Below the pieces are notes generated by a model. That model did not search any database. It was not told the origin of the DNA and saw nothing but the letters and a program-made list of their open reading frames with translations. Shown here piece by piece: positions 16,805 through 22,070 of a stretch of DNA of 64,000 nt. How positions within the stretch are numbered: position 1 is the stretch's first letter; each line of letters opens with the position of its first letter. The position numbers were made by a program, and so were the translations under genes. Source of the DNA: Leidyana gryllorum EB-2025a (taxonomy: Eukaryota > Protista > Apicomplexa); the NCBI GenBank assembly GCA_048772705.1, contig JBLWGC010000051.1, forward strand, positions 186,001-250,000, written 5' to 3'.

Positions 16805-17101
16805 CCAGTCTGTTGAACTCCAGAACCACCAAATAGCAACACTCATTCCAGCAAAAGGCCTTATCGCAAGGCACTGCCACATGGTGTTCCGCCCCTCTCC
16901 TCAGTCTAGCTATGACACTACCGCAAACCGCAAAGCCCCAACCCTGCAGAAAAAGGTAGTCGGAGTGCAGCAAAATCTACATTTCTAATTATAAAGTTGA
17001 CCGCCTGGCAGGTTGAATGCATGAGAATGATGTACAGCTTTACAGTTGTTGTAGGAATACTCACAGTTGAGCGGCGCTCGGCCAACTTAAGCAGTAAGGC
17101 A

Positions 17102-17983
17102 GTCAGAGTGGTAGTGCATGATGTATCCTCGTCACGGATGTCGGAGGAAATGGGTGAAATCAAATCATCATTGTGAGACATGAATATCTTAGCCAAGATG
17201 GTCAGAGTGGTAGTGCATGATGTATCCTCGTCACGGACGTCGGAGGAAATGGGTGATATCAAATCATCATTTCTGGCATGAATGTATTAGTCGATAGTCA
17301 GAGTGGTAGTGCATGATGTATCCTCGTCACGGACGTCGGAGGAAATGGGTGATATCAAATCATCATTTCTGGCATGAACGAATCGGTCAAGATAGTCAGA
17401 GTGGTAGTGCATGATGTATCCTCGTCACGGACGTCGGAGGAAATGGGTGATATCAAATCATCATTTCTGGCATGAATTAATTAGTCGAGATAGTCAGAGT
17501 GGTAGTGCATGATGTATCCTCGTCACGGACGTCGGAGGAAATGGGTGATATCAAATCATCATTTCTGGCATGAATTAATTAGTCGAGATAGTCAGAGTGG
17601 TAGTGCATGATGTATCCTCGTCACGGACGTCGGAGGAAATGGGTGATATCAAATCATCATTTCTGGCATGAATTAATTAGTCGAGATAGTCAGAGTGGTA
17701 GTGCATGATGTATCCTCGTCACGGACGTCGGAGGAAATTGGTGATATCAAATCATCACATTAGTCGAACCACACACAGCACACACGGTACTTAGCAGCTA
17801 TGATTTGTCGTCGAAATCAGAGTGGTAGTGCATGATATATCCTCTTCACAGACGTCGGACAAGATTGGGTGATATCAAAACATCATCTTACATGAATGCA
17901 TTAGTCAAGATAGTCAGAGTGGTAGTGCATGATGTATCCTCGTCACAGACGTCGGAGGAAATTGGGTGATATCAAATCATCAT
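17102..17983 (-). ncRNA. Tandem array of 9 box C/D snoRNA genes, U33/snR55-like
   Basis: Units start on + at about 17102, 17201, 17297, 17395, 17493, 17591, 17689, 17816, 17913 (period 96-99 bp, one longer spacer). Minus-strand unit: ATGATGA (C) tttgatatcacccatttcct CCGA (D') cgtcc GTGACGA (C') ggatacat CATGCACTACCACT CTGA (D); the guide pairs with conserved SSU GGUGGUGGUGCAUG. Confidence 0.85.
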
Positions 17984-18027
17984 CCGAAGGGGATTACGGC
18001 ATAGCAGAAGAACATTAGATAGGCACC

Positions 18028-18058
18028 TTGCATGGCACGTGCACGTTGTGAAAAATTT
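18028..18058. promoter_or_regulatory. Putative bidirectional promoter core between the snoRNA array and mscL
   Basis: TTGCATGGCACGTGCACG packs TGCATG, CACGTG and GTGCAC, followed by AAAAATTT, inside a 91-bp divergent spacer. Confidence 0.4.
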
Positions 18059-18074
18059 GAATAGGTTTGTGGAA

Positions 18075-18689
18075 ATGGGGTGCGGCTGTTGTGCAGGTTT
18101 TCGAGATTTTATTTTCCGAGGAAATGTTGTAGACATCGCTGTTGGCCTGGTGGTTGGTGCAGCATTCAAGGATGTCGTGGACGCTTTAGTTGCCGATTTG
18201 CTGACTCCCTTAATCGGCATATTCGGAGACATACCCGACTTCTCGAAAGAAACCTTCTCTATCAGAGGTAGCACCTTTACTTATGGGCACTTCGTGAATG
18301 TGGTCATTTCTTTCCTTATTCTGGCTCTCGTCATCTATTGCTGTGTCATCATGCCGATGAACAAGATCAATCATATGAGAGGGCTCGACAAGCCGACGAC
18401 TGAACCATGTCCCTTCTGCTGTAGCGACATTGGTCTTGAGGCGAAAGTCTGTCCTAATTGTACTCGTGATTTGCCAGTGAAACCCCCAGTAGAAGAGTCA
18501 GTGGATGTGAAAAAGAAATCGGGCAGTTTGGGGGACAGATTGATGAGTCTGACGGGGCGAAAGTCCGCTGAGAAGGCACCTGAGCCAGCCGCAAAGCAAG
18601 AAGGGAATCCGATTGCGGACGGAATGGCGGCGAAGGCAGATCAACAAGCAGCCTCTTCTGGGGTCAAAACTCAACCTCCACCGAAGTGA
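18075..18689 (+). CDS. mscL: Large-conductance mechanosensitive channel MscL with C-terminal zinc ribbon, intronless
   Basis: FRDFIFRGNVVDIAVGLVVGAAFKDVVDALVADLLTPLIG (S1/TM1), YGHFVNVVISFLILALVIY (TM2), CPFC..CPNCT. Confidence 0.93.
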   Translation: MGCGCCAGFRDFIFRGNVVDIAVGLVVGAAFKDVVDALVADLLTPLIGIFGDIPDFSKETFSIRGSTFTYGHFVNVVISFLILALVIYCCVIMPMNKINHMRGLDKPTTEPCPFCCSDIGLEAKVCPNCTRDLPVKPPVEESVDVKKKSGSLGDRLMSLTGRKSAEKAPEPAAKQEGNPIADGMAAKADQQAASSGVKTQPPPK

Positions 18690-18720
18690 TCATTTTCCTT
18701 TTTGACAAACTGTCCGATGC

Positions 18721-20235
18721 ATGGGGTATGAGCTCCTGGAGTTTTCAAGCGGCGTAGTGCTGCTGTTGGCACTTGTCTTGGTAGCGGGGCGTAAAGGCGC
18801 AAATCAGATTGGTCCACCAGCTTGCTTGGCACTGTTGATCTATGTGTACGCGGCACCATCCACTTATCTGGCTGACCCTCCGATGGTCACCATCAAGATG
18901 GCTTTGGCGTCGGGTTTTGCCGTGGCCGCTTTGGAGAGAAGTGGAGGGATGGACTACTGTCAGTATTGGCAATTAAAACTACTACAACGATGGCCCAGAC
19001 TAACGGGCTGTATTGCCCCTTGTCTGGCTTTCCTAAATGGTCTGCTGGGCGACAACCTACAGCTCACAAACCGTATACTTGTTGATGTGGCACACACATA
19101 TCGCGCGCGATCTCAGCCTTGTGGCCACGTGGTGGCCACTGGAATAGTCGCGGGTTTTCTAGCGAATACCTGTCTGCCTCTAGGTGCTCCACTACTCTAC
19201 ATGGCTGACACGCTCCCTCTTTTGAGCCGGGGGCACCGCAGCTATCGAGATATGTGTTTCCGCCTGCTTTGCGGGAACTTGCTGGGCATTCTGACAACCA
19301 TATTACTGCTGGAGGGCGTGACACGAATGTGTATCTGGATGAAGCTCAAGCAAGGCAAGCTTACAGAGCATTCGCAGGCTGCACAGGACGGTGATCAATA
19401 CTCGACTGACCTGGAGGGTGTCGTATTGGGGCACACTCTTGAAGCTTGCGCCGCCGTTGTCCAGAGCGCCCCCCCCGCCGTTGGAGACGTCAGTCCCGAG
19501 TCGACCACAACCAGAGAGCTGCGCAGCGAGCCTGTTCTGACTACAGTCCGAATAGAGGAACGAGATGTTGTTGTCACCGACTCGTCTCTCAACAGGGATG
19601 AAAAGCGTGGTAACGGGATGGCTGCAATTACCTTCGTCGGGCTCTGGACAACCCTATTGTTATTTCAGTTGATCGTTCCAGTGGAACGTATGACTGCTGT
19701 AAGGACGTCAAGATACGATGCTGCGCTCTGCTGGATGATGGTGATGACGGTGGGAGTGTGTTGGGTTGGACGCACCCCGGTTGCCACCGTTTTTGCCAGC
19801 CCAGTCGCGGGCGGGATAGGTGTCGGTGTGCTGACGGTTATGGGCATGGCGTGGCTTACGGGGACTGTTTATGGTATACTCCTGCGGCAGGTCACGTTCC
19901 AACATAATGCTTCCCCTAATCAACTACCGCCTGTGCTGTACATGTTGGTGATCGGATCAGCGGGAGCATTGTTCTTCTCTCCTGCATCGGCGGCTGTGTT
20001 GGCAACAGAACTGTACGGCCGCAGCTCGTTCTCGGACAAATGGCTTCTGACTTCATTTCCTCTATTCGCCTTGTTCTTGGTATGGGGATTGACTCCGCCA
20101 ATGGAGGGCGTTGCGGCTGCTGTCGGGCCCCAGGAGATCTCATTGCACCGACCCGGGGGTTACCACTCGTTCCTCGTCCCCTCCGTCCTCTCGATCGCCT
20201 TCACGTGTCAGTTTGTGTATATATTGGCTTGCTAA
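18721..20235 (+). CDS. Divergent anaerobic C4-dicarboxylate transporter (DcuA/DcuB family), intronless
   Basis: Multi-TM protein; LLLALVLVAGRKG, ALERSGGMDY..KLLQRWPRLTGCIAP, GVLTVMGMAWL and C-terminal HSFLVPSVLSI align with recalled DcuA/B blocks. Confidence 0.72.
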   Translation: MGYELLEFSSGVVLLLALVLVAGRKGANQIGPPACLALLIYVYAAPSTYLADPPMVTIKMALASGFAVAALERSGGMDYCQYWQLKLLQRWPRLTGCIAPCLAFLNGLLGDNLQLTNRILVDVAHTYRARSQPCGHVVATGIVAGFLANTCLPLGAPLLYMADTLPLLSRGHRSYRDMCFRLLCGNLLGILTTILLLEGVTRMCIWMKLKQGKLTEHSQAAQDGDQYSTDLEGVVLGHTLEACAAVVQSAPPAVGDVSPESTTTRELRSEPVLTTVRIEERDVVVTDSSLNRDEKRGNGMAAITFVGLWTTLLLFQLIVPVERMTAVRTSRYDAALCWMMVMTVGVCWVGRTPVATVFASPVAGGIGVGVLTVMGMAWLTGTVYGILLRQVTFQHNASPNQLPPVLYMLVIGSAGALFFSPASAAVLATELYGRSSFSDKWLLTSFPLFALFLVWGLTPPMEGVAAAVGPQEISLHRPGGYHSFLVPSVLSIAFTCQFVYILAC

Positions 20236-22070
20236 CGGCGCATTGTTAATGGCTTCCTTGGTCAAGCCAATATCGTGAGTCCTGATCAAAATCAAGGATT
20301 CAGCAGACAATTTCTGTGCCACTGGAATCAACAAAAGGCCCAAGTAGTCGCGACGTGTCTGCCACGTCATATCCTTCCAATGATCTTCAACGCGCTTTTT
20401 CCACCCTTTGAAGTGGTCTTGCGATACAAACTGACGACAATCGTCCGTTGCTTCCAATTGATGATTGACCAACCGGTCAAGAAATCTACTCCAGGATGGA
20501 ATGGGAACAACAACACCGATCAGATCTCACTGTTTTCGCGACCACCCGAGACAAATAACGGGGATTCTTCGGGGCCACAACTCAATCCATTTCCCTTCCA
20601 GTATTTCGAGATTCTGTGCACCCCCCTTCGCGAAGCCTATGCCGGGGTCCATGATGACGCGCCATCTTCGCACTCCAAGTCGTACAGCTTTATTAACTTT
20701 CGCCTTTAGTTCAGACATCACTTCTTCCGACAAATTGCCATATTCTGCTGATTGAACAATGCCATCAACATTCTGGTCAGACTGCGGCTCACTTTTCAAC
20801 CCAGTCATAGTCTGCGGATCTCCCCGACAGTGACTGACAATGACGGTGCACTGGTGTCGCGCTGCCACGCGGATCAATGGTTCCCATGTAGGTAGAGTCG
20901 GATCAGAGACGTCATTCAACTTGAAAACAAGTCTCACACACTGACTAGGGAGCGGTGGGTGGACTCACATTAGTACGAGGAAACATGGAACAGATTGTGT
21001 CCAGCACTTCCGCGTGACGAGTATCCACGAATAGGGGTACCATTTGGGCACGAAGCCCCCACGCTGCCAGAACGGGAATCAATCGCTCCTTTTCCTCTTG
21101 AGAAGATATTGGTTGTGCACCAGGACGGGTGGATTCGGCCCCCACATCGATGGCATCTGCTCCGGCTTGTATGAAGCGGGCCATTTCGTTGACTGCTTTC
21201 GATGCTTCTGAAGAAAGGGCTACATACGCCGTGCGAAGAGGAGCCTACGTTCGGCAGTGGGAGACCTACTGCCATCACTGATGAAGCGGCCACCATCACT
21301 GAAGCTATCGGGGGTGACATTTAGGACTCCCATCGTCTTTATCCGGCCTTTACATTGCCATAAACGTGGACCAACAGCCACGACACTACAGGGCCACACT
21401 AGTTAGCGAATGTCTAGCACAATACTTACGTGTGTGTAGCAATGTTTCCAGGACCGTCCTTACGTGCACGCAGATTCGCGAGAAGAGACTTGAACAACCA
21501 AGTTAGAGAGCAGAACCCGCTTAGCAAAACCCTTACTATGGCTGGTCGATGAAGTTCAAGATCGACCAAGACCTCAGGATTTAGGTCACACAATGGTTCC
21601 AACACAAAAGTTCGCTCAGAGGCGCGAATATGGGGGAGGCGGAGAGCCCACTTGAGGCGGATATGTTCTCCAGAACACATTTGACCACAGCGGCTGTCCA
21701 GCAAAATCATGTTGCCTGAGATTTTATCACGAGCGCAGACAATATCGAGATCGATTGTTCGATCTGCTGCAAAGACTCGTCCGAGAGTAGCAGGAGGACG
21801 ACCTAACTGTTCCTCGATCGACTGGAGTTTTGAGAGCAATTTATTGAGATGACAATCAACACATTCCATAGTCGAATGCGGCCCACATTCAAGCCGTATG
21901 ACAGCATTGAGGTACTTAGGGGCTGTCTGGGAGGTATAAGCGGCTTCTGTCTCGTACAGACATGAGGAGTCAGCGATACGATAACCATTTGCCTCTATAA
22001 GCCCACATGCTTGCTCGATGTTGGCCAGACGACTGCCCAAGTTGGAGCCTGCTGCAACCCACACCTCCAT
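20140..22070 (-). CDS. Bifunctional HPPK-DHPS (folate synthesis), multi-exon
   Basis: HPPK: AAGSNLG, LYETEA, YLNAV, RTIDLDI, LPH..ERTFVLEPL. DHPS: GVLNVTPDSFSDGG, IDVGAESTRPGA, NDVS, DPGIGFAK, SRK, RTHD. Confidence 0.95.

What the first reader, a model, noticed from the sequence alone, without database searches (positions are those of the whole stretch)
18075..18689. Bacterial-type MscL in a protist, with an apparent eukaryotic acylation leader
Seen: a complete intronless MscL (S1, TM1, TM2, CxxC..CxxC zinc ribbon) starting MGCGCCAG. Known: MscL is the bacterial osmotic release valve and is only sporadic in eukaryotes; Gly2 with nearby Cys is the typical N-myristoylation/palmitoylation pattern that targets apicomplexan proteins to the pellicle or plasma membrane. 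Inference: a horizontally acquired channel refitted with a lipid anchor on the tension-sensing N-terminal helix.
Basis: partly seen in the sequence, partly recalled or inferred. Interest (0 to 1): 0.8.

Follow-up and report, generated by a model that had tools for sequence, protein, structure and literature searches.

The report
Gregarine MscL channel with cysteine leader
A gut-parasite (gregarine) genome really encodes a bacterial-type pressure-release channel, but it was inherited within gregarines and shares a branch with algal versions, and this whole eukaryotic branch has gained a cysteine-rich start that probably carries lipid anchors.

Summary
Observation confirmed. Window 18075-18689 (+) is an intact, intronless, single-copy 204-aa MscL: Pfam 101.6 bits, TIGR00220 above its cut-off, and the fold matches 2OAR. 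It has S1, TM1, TM2, a CxxC..CxxC zinc ribbon and a disordered tail, and it starts MGCGCCAG.

It lies in a eukaryotic contig between DNA polymerase epsilon and HPPK-DHPS, with host-like GC3. It is not a contaminant.

Interpretation partly supported.
- The zinc ribbon is not new. It marks the closest bacterial MscL subfamily (Chloroflexota, Actinomycetota, Acidobacteriota, Patescibacteria).
- The gene is not a private bacterial acquisition. Its nearest relatives are gregarines (Gregarina sp. Poly1, Blabericola migrator, three unnamed contigs, one with a GT-AG intron); clade support is 100/99.
- This clade groups with glaucophyte and trebouxiophyte algal MscLs apart from bacteria (97/93 in one tree, 67/82 in another).
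- Cysteines just before S1 occur in 6/6 gregarines and 19/24 eukaryote-clade members, against 13/429 other sequences. This fits S-acylation.
- Gly2 occurs in only 2/6 gregarines, so myristoylation is at best lineage-specific.
- NMT and at least ten DHHC loci are present in the genome.

No sequencing runs were listed, so transcript start and read coverage are untested. The scan had not noted an MscL on other DNA.

The parts
18075..18689 (+). Complete intronless MscL coding sequence (204 codons plus TGA stop)
   Evidence: ORF and sequence. Pfam MscL 101.6 bits. TIGR00220 89.8 against cut-off 71. Only MscL match in the genome.
18075..18098 (+). N-terminal leader MGCGCCAG: Gly2 plus Cys3, Cys5 and Cys6, a putative acylation site on the cytoplasmic side just before S1
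   Evidence: Sequence. C3 and C6 are invariant among the 4 gregarine rows of A4. Cys within 10 aa before S1 occurs in 19/24 of the eukaryotic clade against 13/429 other sequences. Gly2 occurs in only 2/6 gregarines. ATG context is gaaATGg.
18099..18119 (+). S1 amphipathic helix core (F9-R15), carrying the conserved Phe9 and Phe12
   Evidence: F9, F12, R15 are invariant in A1. Helix 6-15 in the AF2 model. Aligns to E. coli MscL residues 6 onward.
18126..18227 (+). TM1, the pore-lining helix with the conserved N17, V18, V19, D20, A22, G28, A30, F31 and near-invariant G24
   Evidence: Invariant and nearly invariant columns in A1. Helix 18-51. HMMER alignment to solved E. coli MscL.
18228..18281 (+). 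Extracytoplasmic loop with a short beta hairpin
   Evidence: Strands 60-63 and 66-69 in the AF2 model. Conserved P54, D55, F56, S57 and the following G-S-x-F-x-Y-G stretch in A1 and A4.
18282..18377 (+). TM2, containing a Cys pair (C89, C90) toward its cytoplasmic half
   Evidence: Helix 70-101. The Cys at the C90 column is present in 3 of the 4 gregarine rows of A4 and in P0410. Bacterial relatives have Phe there.
18399..18467 (+). C-terminal zinc ribbon (C112-x2-C115 ... C126-x2-C129), replacing the helical bundle of E. coli and M. tuberculosis MscL
   Evidence: All four Cys invariant in A1. pLDDT about 90. Local Foldseek matches to RanBP2/NZF zinc fingers at rmsd 1.0-1.4 A, with non-significant E-values. 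The motif is present in 24/24 of the eukaryotic clade and 396/429 other sequences.
18478..18686 (+). Lys/Glu/Ala/Pro-rich, probably disordered cytoplasmic tail (residues 135-204)
   Evidence: pLDDT falls to about 45-55 from about residue 141 on, with no secondary structure. Not alignable outside close relatives. The relative on L002 carries a similar K/E/P-rich tail on a second exon.

Best explanation
This is a working nuclear gene of an insect-type gregarine (Apicomplexa). It encodes a tension-gated large-conductance channel of the MscL family, belonging to the subfamily whose cytoplasmic C-terminus is a zinc ribbon.

The subfamily is bacterial in origin, but this copy was not taken up by this organism. 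It was inherited within gregarines and belongs to a wider eukaryotic branch that also holds glaucophyte and trebouxiophyte green-algal MscLs.

Inferred mechanism, from family knowledge: five subunits form a pore lined by TM1. Membrane stretch acts through the S1 helix, which lies on the inner leaflet, and pulls the hydrophobic gate open so that solutes escape on osmotic downshock. For a gregarine this could matter in the gut lumen and in cysts shed into the environment.

The eukaryotic branch gained one to four cysteines directly before S1. The most likely reading is S-acylation by DHHC enzymes, which would pin the N-terminal end of S1 to the cytoplasmic leaflet and help membrane sorting. In this species, and in Blabericola, a Gly2 additionally gives an N-myristoylation consensus, so dual acylation is possible.

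Shown: family membership, conserved gate and S1 residues, eukaryotic location, gregarine clade, clade-specific cysteine leader, and presence of NMT and DHHC genes.

Inferred: pentamer, gating, lipidation, membrane of residence, physiological role.
For: Family: Pfam and NCBIfam scores above their cut-offs, PDB sequence hits at 1e-16, MscL as the best fold hit, and invariant F9, F12, R15, G16, N17, D20, G28, F31.

Host gene, not contaminant:
- The contig is at least 250 kb.
- Neighbours include a Pol epsilon thumb domain, HPPK and an integrin-beta-like gene.
- GC is a uniform 48-57%.
- GC3 is 0.51, inside the host range of 0.46-0.59.
- No sigma-70 promoter or terminator excess.

Gregarine inheritance:
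- The best relatives are EukProt Gregarina sp. Poly1 and Blabericola migrator, plus three Logan contigs.
- Clade support is 100/99.
- The L002 copy has a 122-nt GTGAGT...CAG intron with both exons in frame. It lies among GH47 and proteasome genes, and its proteasome subunit is 75-79% identical to this genome's.
- L002 and L090 share a neighbouring gene.

Eukaryotic branch:
- Named members are Gloeochaete, Micractinium, Chlorella ohadii, Nannochloris and Coccomyxa.
- P0304 lies on a contig with cullin and eIF5 genes.
- The eukaryote/bacteria split has support 97/93.

Leader:
- Cys before S1 occurs in 6/6 gregarines and 19/24 of the clade, against 13/429 others.
- The start position is fixed by in-frame stops 3 and 10 codons upstream in L090 and L002.
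- NMT is present at 242.9 bits, and 13 DHHC matches score over the cut-off at about 11 loci.
Against: - No RNA or DNA reads could be examined. An upstream exon that would bury Gly2 cannot be excluded for this copy.
- Gly2 is absent in four of six gregarines, so myristoylation is not a conserved requirement.
- No lipidation predictor or experiment was available. Cysteines could instead serve redox or metal binding.
- The eukaryote/bacteria split drops to 67/82 support in the smaller tree. The alignment has only about 140 columns.
- Many 'eukaryote-like' rows are unnamed short contigs.
- Red algae, chromerids, dinoflagellates and other apicomplexans were not sampled by name, so the route into gregarines is open.
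- Only the monomer was modelled, at mean pLDDT 67.
Confidence: 0.7

Rival explanations
1. Independent, gregarine-specific horizontal transfer. An ancestor of insect gregarines took the zinc-ribbon mscL directly from a bacterium, for example a gut or soil actinobacterium. The grouping with algal MscLs would then be an artefact of a short alignment and of convergent eukaryotic changes such as the cysteine leader.
For: - Identity to the best bacterial proteins (50-58%) is as high as to other gregarines (46-61%).
- Eukaryote monophyly has only 67/82 support in the 49-row tree.
- The gene is reported absent from Plasmodium, Toxoplasma, Cryptosporidium and other parasites (PMC3681921).
- Actinocatenispora and Kitasatospora sequences sit nearest the eukaryotes in two trees, with weak support.
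Against: - The 81-row careful tree separates all 20 eukaryote-type rows from 60 bacterial rows at 97/93.
- The pre-S1 cysteine motif (C-[AS]-G-F-[RK]-D-F) is shared position for position by gregarines, Gloeochaete, Micractinium and Nannochloris. This is more simply explained by one origin.
- No specific bacterial sister was recovered.
Confidence: 0.2
2. The cysteine leader is not a lipid anchor. It would instead be a redox or metal switch: cysteines at the start of S1, perhaps with the TM2 cysteines, would form disulfides between or within subunits, or bind a metal, and so lock or tune the gate.
For: - The cysteines come in clusters of 2-4.
- They are accompanied in four of six gregarines by a new Cys in TM2 (C90 column).
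- From general knowledge of MscL, engineered S1 cysteine cross-links are known to hold the channel closed.
- The protein already carries a four-Cys metal site on the same cytoplasmic side.
Against: - The cytoplasm is reducing.
- Cysteines next to a membrane-embedded segment near an N-terminus, sometimes after Gly2, are the usual S-acylation context.
- The number and spacing of the cysteines vary (CC, CxxxC, CxCC), which suits acylation better than a fixed metal site.
- The acylation enzymes are encoded in the genome.
Confidence: 0.2
3. Assembly chimera or bacterial contamination. The mscL, and the Dcu-like gene behind it, would be bacterial DNA wrongly joined to a gregarine contig.
For: - Two bacterial-type membrane genes lie in tandem, 31 bp apart, both without introns.
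- Read coverage could not be checked.
Against: - Orthologues exist in five other gregarine data sets, including two transcriptomes and one intron-bearing genomic copy.
- GC3 and codon use match the host's.
- Flanking genes on both sides are eukaryotic.
- The closest bacterial protein is only 58% identical.
- No bacterial promoter or terminator signals.
Confidence: 0.02

Closest known systems
Bacterial MscL (E. coli MscL; M. tuberculosis MscL, PDB 2OAR)
   Same: - S1 helix with two conserved Phe.
- The R-G-N-V-V-D motif and the Gly-rich TM1 gate.
- Loop, TM2, and both termini cytoplasmic.
- Sequence match at E 1e-16 and best fold match.
- N-terminal length within 2 residues of E. coli MscL.
   Different: - The C-terminal helical bundle is replaced by a four-Cys zinc ribbon plus a tail of about 70 residues.
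- The first residues are replaced by a Gly/Cys leader.
- The gene is encoded in a eukaryotic nucleus.
Bacterial zinc-ribbon MscL subfamily (annotated MscL, some with PF10571; Chloroflexota, Actinomycetota, Acidobacteriota, Patescibacteria, Gloeobacterales)
   Same: - Same architecture, including CxxC..CxxC right after TM2.
- 50-58% identity over the core.
   Different: - Bacterial members start directly with M-L-x-G-F-K and have almost no cysteine before S1 (13/429, mostly one cluster).
- Most lack the long tail.
- They fall on the other side of the eukaryote/bacteria split.
Algal MscL-like proteins, mostly 'hypothetical protein' (Coccomyxa subellipsoidea KAK9918657.1, Nannochloris KAL4542103.1, Micractinium KAL4442516.1, Chlorella ohadii, Gloeochaete MMETSP0308)
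   Same: - Same eukaryotic branch, with the zinc ribbon and a low-complexity tail.
- In most, Cys residues directly before S1.
   Different: - Algal proteins carry 10-45 extra N-terminal residues before the cysteines, so these are not near the N-terminus.
- Many end in -K-V or -x-V, which the gregarine proteins do not.
- No experimental work on them turned up in the paper searches run here.
Dual-acylated apicomplexan pellicle and membrane proteins (ISP, GAP45, CDPK type; named from general knowledge, not tested here)
   Same: Met-Gly followed by nearby cysteines at the extreme N-terminus. NMT and DHHC enzymes are present in the genome.
   Different: Those are peripheral proteins whose only membrane hold is the lipid. 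Here the leader sits on an integral two-pass channel, and Gly2 is not conserved among orthologues.

Membership tests
MscL (Pfam PF01741 / TIGR00220) | Profile score above the curated cut-off | tested here: met
   PF01741 scores 101.6 against 27.4. TIGR00220 scores 89.8 against 71; the narrower NF00xxxx equivalogs fall below their cut-offs.
MscL (Pfam PF01741 / TIGR00220) | Architecture S1 helix - TM1 - loop - TM2, about 100-residue core, no other domains in the core | tested here: met
   AF2 elements are H6-15, H18-51, hairpin 60-69 and H70-101. The best Foldseek hit is 2OAR, probability 1.00.
MscL (Pfam PF01741 / TIGR00220) | Conserved S1 phenylalanines and the TM1 gate motif (F..F..RGNVVD.A.G...GAAF) | tested here: met
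   F9, F12, R15, G16, N17, V18, V19, D20, A22, G28, A30 and F31 are invariant, and G24 is nearly invariant, in A1. Residue-by-residue alignment to E. coli MscL.
MscL (Pfam PF01741 / TIGR00220) | Homopentamer gated by membrane tension with nS conductance | not testable with these tools
   Needs patch clamp or downshock rescue.
Zinc-ribbon MscL subfamily | CxxC-(6-16 residues)-CxxC directly after TM2 | tested here: met
   C112, C115, C126 and C129 are invariant in A1. The motif occurs in 24/24 eukaryotic and 396/429 other relatives. pLDDT is about 90.
Zinc-ribbon MscL subfamily | Pfam PF10571 (UPF0547 zinc ribbon) hit | tested here: inconclusive
   Some relatives carry PF10571. The window protein gave no such hit at E <= 0.01. 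Foldseek matches to RanBP2/NZF fingers have rmsd near 1 A but non-significant E-values.
N-myristoylated proteins | Gly at position 2 with a permissive following sequence (G-{EDRKHPFYW}-x-x-[STAGCN]-{P}, pattern recalled from PROSITE PS00008) | tested here: met
   G2-C3-G4-C5-C6-A7 fits by inspection. The pattern is weak and was recalled from memory.
N-myristoylated proteins | NMT enzyme present in the organism | tested here: met
   PF01233 match at 242.9 bits on contig C230.
N-myristoylated proteins | Gly2 conserved among orthologues | tested here: not met
   Only the window and Blabericola (MGSCCTG) have Gly2. The other four gregarines start MVCC, MICGKTC, MVVCGKTC and MVCCGKTC.
N-myristoylated proteins | M1 is the true translation start on the mature mRNA | tested here: inconclusive
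   M1 is the first in-frame ATG, in a purine -3 / G +4 context, and the next Met is inside TM2. Orthologues start at the same place, with in-frame stops 3 and 10 codons upstream. No RNA reads exist for this genome.
S-acylated (palmitoylated) membrane proteins | Cytoplasmic cysteines next to a membrane-associated segment, conserved in orthologues | tested here: met
   C3 and C6 are invariant among the 4 gregarine rows of A4. Cys before S1 occurs in 19/24 of the clade against 13/429 others.
S-acylated (palmitoylated) membrane proteins | DHHC acyltransferases present | tested here: met
   13 matches over the PF01529 cut-off, at about 11 loci.
S-acylated (palmitoylated) membrane proteins | Thioester-linked fatty acid demonstrated | not testable with these tools
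   Needs acyl-biotin exchange, click-chemistry labelling or mass spectrometry.
Lineage-specific bacterium-to-protist HGT | Nearest relatives are bacterial, not eukaryotic | tested here: not met
   The nearest rows are five gregarine sequences (100/99), then an all-eukaryote side of the tree at 97/93 or 67/82.
Lineage-specific bacterium-to-protist HGT | Absent from sister lineages of the host | tested here: inconclusive
   PMC3681921 reports no MscL in Plasmodium, Toxoplasma, Cryptosporidium and other parasites. No such named protein ranked above the bacterial plateau in the 1.84-billion-protein search. Chromerids, dinoflagellates, red algae and marine gregarines were not checked by name.

The most novel reading that the evidence does not exclude
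A eukaryotic branch of MscL (gregarines, glaucophytes, trebouxiophyte algae) has turned the tension-sensing S1 helix into a lipid-anchored element. Reversible S-acylation of the pre-S1 cysteines, plus myristate in some gregarines, would set the channel's tension threshold or its membrane address. That would make it a lipid-modified, regulatable 'force-from-lipid' channel, retained in gregarines and lost in the other studied apicomplexans.
Probability: 0.3. Interest if true: 0.75.

Novelty: new variant of a known kind. Interest (0 to 1): 0.5.

Why it matters
MscL is the textbook channel gated directly by membrane tension. Its S1 helix is thought to couple the lipid leaflet to the gate. A natural lineage in which S1 is covalently tied to lipid would be a ready-made test of that model.

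For parasitology, this shows that gregarines keep a mechanosensitive channel that a 2013 survey did not find in Plasmodium, Toxoplasma, Cryptosporidium or the other pathogenic protozoa it examined. It also corrects the idea of a recent bacterial gift: the gene belongs to an older eukaryotic MscL branch shared with algae. That bears on how much algal-type or early-acquired bacterial material early apicomplexans carried and later lost.

If the cysteines turn out not to be acylated, the finding reduces to a new taxonomic occurrence of a known channel.

Tried and rejected
- **Read-level checks.** The look-up of sequencing runs listed no run for 17800-20400. Read laying was therefore not used, and coverage continuity and the transcript start remain untested.
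- **Synteny.** No gene other than mscL is shared between the window and L002 or L090. L002 and L090 do share a neighbour with each other.
- **Co-transfer with the Dcu-like gene.** The adjacency is not seen in L002 or L090. By language-model features the Dcu-like protein looks Pseudomonadota-like and the MscL Actinomycetota-like. This is weak evidence and gives no support for one shared island.
- **Bacterial expression signals.** One promoter-like site (2.3 expected) and no terminator.
- **Compositional signs of recent transfer.** None found.
- **Rfam.** No match at gathering thresholds in the window.
- **Word-indexed protein searches.** The single-protein search missed the gregarine relatives. 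The exhaustive representative search was needed, and the gregarine profile then found Blabericola.
- **Donor phylum.** No supported bacterial sister. Actinocatenispora and Kitasatospora are nearest, but only weakly.
- **SRR11177099.** It appears in no held paper, so the organisms of L002 and L090 are unnamed.
- **Spliced model.** The spliced L002 protein was never joined for a search. Its exons were translated separately by reference. Alignments used P0001:1-152, whose last four residues are intron read-through.

Full report
**1.

Window 18075-18689 (+) is an open frame of 204 codons beginning M-G-C-G-C-C-A-G.
- It scores 101.6 bits on Pfam MscL (cut-off 27.4) and 89.8 on the NCBIfam equivalog TIGR00220 (cut-off 71).
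- It matches solved E. coli MscL chains at E 1.4e-16.
- An AlphaFold2 model built on 20 relatives has mean pLDDT 67. It gives S1 (6-15), TM1 (18-51), a short hairpin (60-69), TM2 (70-101) and a confident small domain at 109-130. The tail from about residue 141 on is low-confidence.
- Foldseek's best PDB hit is M. tuberculosis MscL 2OAR, probability 1.00. The small domain superposes on RanBP2/NZF zinc fingers at about 1 A, although those E-values are not significant.
- The S1 and gate hallmarks F9, F12, R15, G16, N17, D20, G28, F31 and the four ribbon cysteines are invariant in an alignment with 19 relatives.
- The gene is the only MscL match in the 15.5-Mb assembly.

**2. It is a gene of the eukaryotic host**

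- The window is part of a contig of at least 250 kb.
- Upstream lies a DNA polymerase epsilon thumb domain. Downstream, on the other strand, lies HPPK, and farther on an integrin-beta-like gene.
- GC is even across the window at 48-57%.
- The gene's GC3 (0.51) and codon use fall inside the range of 13 other ORFs.
- There is no excess of bacterial promoter or terminator motifs.
- Sequencing runs could not be found, so read-level proof of continuity is missing.

**3. What its relatives are**

A word-indexed search returned mostly bacterial MscLs of 130-150 aa that share the CxxC..CxxC ribbon, at 50-58% identity. In GTDB genomes these belong to Chloroflexota, Acidobacteriota, Patescibacteria, Actinomycetota and Gloeobacterales. 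The zinc ribbon is therefore a trait of the source subfamily, not an addition made in the protist.

The single best hit, P0001, lies on a 20.5-kb contig with GH47 and proteasome genes.
- Its proteasome subunit is 75-79% identical to this genome's orthologue, which is itself split by an intron.
- Its mscL has a 122-nt GTGAGT...CAG intron in the tail.
- I translated the two exons separately by reference and they are in frame.

An exhaustive profile search of 1.84 billion representatives then lifted a handful of proteins above the bacterial plateau. Exact look-ups and a gregarine-profile search named them:
- Gregarina sp. Poly1 and Blabericola migrator (EukProt transcriptomes);
- the glaucophyte Gloeochaete;
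- the trebouxiophytes Micractinium, Chlorella ohadii, Nannochloris and Coccomyxa.

Another member, P0304, sits on a contig with cullin, eIF5 and RING genes. P0121 (L090) shares a neighbouring gene with L002.

**4. Trees**

- *81 rows, 140 columns, IQ-TREE LG+C20 PMSF.* The window groups with Gregarina sp. Poly1 (100/92) inside a gregarine clade (100/99). All 20 eukaryote-type rows are separated from 60 bacterial rows plus one unnamed row at 97/93.
- *49 rows, adding Blabericola and P0411.* The gregarine clade is again 100/99. The bacteria form one side of a branch at only 67/82, in 72% of bootstrap trees.
- No bacterial phylum is a supported sister. Two actinobacterial sequences come nearest, weakly.

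My reading is vertical descent within gregarines (strong) and a single eukaryotic branch shared with algae (moderate). I show vertical distribution across gregarines and kinship to Archaeplastida algae, not presence across alveolates. A 2013 survey found no MscL in Plasmodium, Toxoplasma, Cryptosporidium and other parasites (PMC3681921). How the gene reached gregarines is open: early eukaryotic acquisition with losses, an algal or endosymbiotic route, or eukaryote-to-eukaryote transfer.

**5. The leader**

The N-terminus is only two residues longer than E. coli's. The 'leader' is therefore a rewrite of the first residues, not an extension.

The six gregarine proteins begin:
- MGCGCCAG (window)
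- MGSCCTG (Blabericola)
- MVCCSG (Gregarina sp. Poly1)
- MVCCGKTCGG
- MVVCGKTCAG
- MICGKTCSG

All are followed directly by F-R-D-F.

- Two cysteine columns are invariant in the four-gregarine alignment A4.
- In the wider eukaryotic branch, 19 of 24 sequences have cysteine within ten residues before S1, often at exactly the -3 position (C-[AS]-G-F). Among the other sequences in hand the figure is 13 of 429, and most of those belong to one cluster or are an algal duplicate. These counts are not phylogenetically independent; they describe a clade trait.
- Gly2 is present in only two of six gregarines.
- The start is well defined in relatives, with in-frame stops 3 and 10 codons upstream of the homologous Met in L090 and L002. 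In the window M1 is the first in-frame ATG, and the next Met lies in TM2.
- The genome encodes NMT, and 13 DHHC matches score over the cut-off at about 11 loci.
- Both MscL termini are cytoplasmic (family knowledge), so the topology permits both modifications.

I therefore favour S-acylation of the pre-S1 cysteines as the conserved function. Myristoylation would be a species-level addition. Both are inferred.

**6. Mechanism**

By homology the protein should form a pentameric pore that opens under membrane stretch. The conserved gate and S1 residues argue that it is functional. A lipid tether at the outer end of S1 would strengthen coupling to the inner leaflet or direct sorting to a particular membrane. 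There is no N-terminal extension that could serve as an organelle presequence.

One other mechanosensitive candidate, a weak MscS-type match, exists in the genome.

A role as an osmotic safety valve for extracellular gut stages or for shed cysts is plausible but speculative.

**7. Rivals**

- Direct gregarine-specific HGT remains possible at about 0.2, because the alignment is short.
- A redox or metal role for the cysteines is about 0.2.
- Contamination or chimera is very unlikely, given orthologues in five other gregarine data sets.

**8. Novelty**

My searches found no paper linking MscL with gregarines, and none describing a cysteine or lipid leader on MscL. The algal members are mostly deposited as hypothetical proteins. 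This is a new variant of a known channel family, of moderate interest, and of higher interest if lipidation of S1 is real.

Earlier notes of this scan call the genome a gregarine and describe extreme gene packing. That agrees with my tree and with the 31-bp spacer to the next gene. The scan had not recorded an MscL elsewhere.

Noticed in passing
window 18721-20235 (+): A 504-aa DcuA/DcuB-type C4-dicarboxylate transporter ORF (Pfam 63.5 bits, N-terminal half only) starts 31 bp after the mscL stop. The adjacency is absent from the relatives L002 and L090. By language-model features the protein looks Pseudomonadota-like.
   Followed up: partly
window 17101-17757 (array), continuing to about 17983: A 98-bp tandem array (6.7 copies, 95% matches) ends about 90 bp upstream of the mscL start codon. 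The in-frame stop before the mscL ORF (17967) lies in its last degenerate copy.
   Followed up: no
window 18032-18064; L002 6375-6398: Short upstream ORFs precede the mscL start in two species. The window has a 10-codon uORF whose ATG lies 43 nt upstream. L002 has a 7-codon uORF whose stop overlaps the main ATG. L090 has none within 150 nt, so this may be chance.
   Followed up: partly
P0123, P0303, P0302, P0304, P0155, P0125, P0428, P0482, P0313 (algal-type relatives): Many algal members of the eukaryotic MscL branch end in -K-V, -R-V, -T-V or -H-V (for example CDKV, CDRV). This is a C-terminal valine motif of the kind known as an ER-export signal. The gregarine proteins lack it.
   Followed up: no
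window 18339-18344 (C89-C90): A Phe-to-Cys change in the cytoplasmic half of TM2 is shared by four of six gregarine MscLs, and the window has two adjacent Cys there. It could be a further acylation site or a partner for the leader cysteines.
   Followed up: no
L002 6837-6958: The orthologue in a related gregarine-like contig has a 122-nt GT-AG intron in the tail region, whereas the window's copy and L090's have none. This is intron gain or loss within the clade.
   Followed up: partly
G000:C104:153223-153369: The only MscS-type (PF00924) match in the genome is a weak single-exon hit of 29.9 bits. The gregarine's mechanosensitive channel set therefore appears very small.
   Followed up: no
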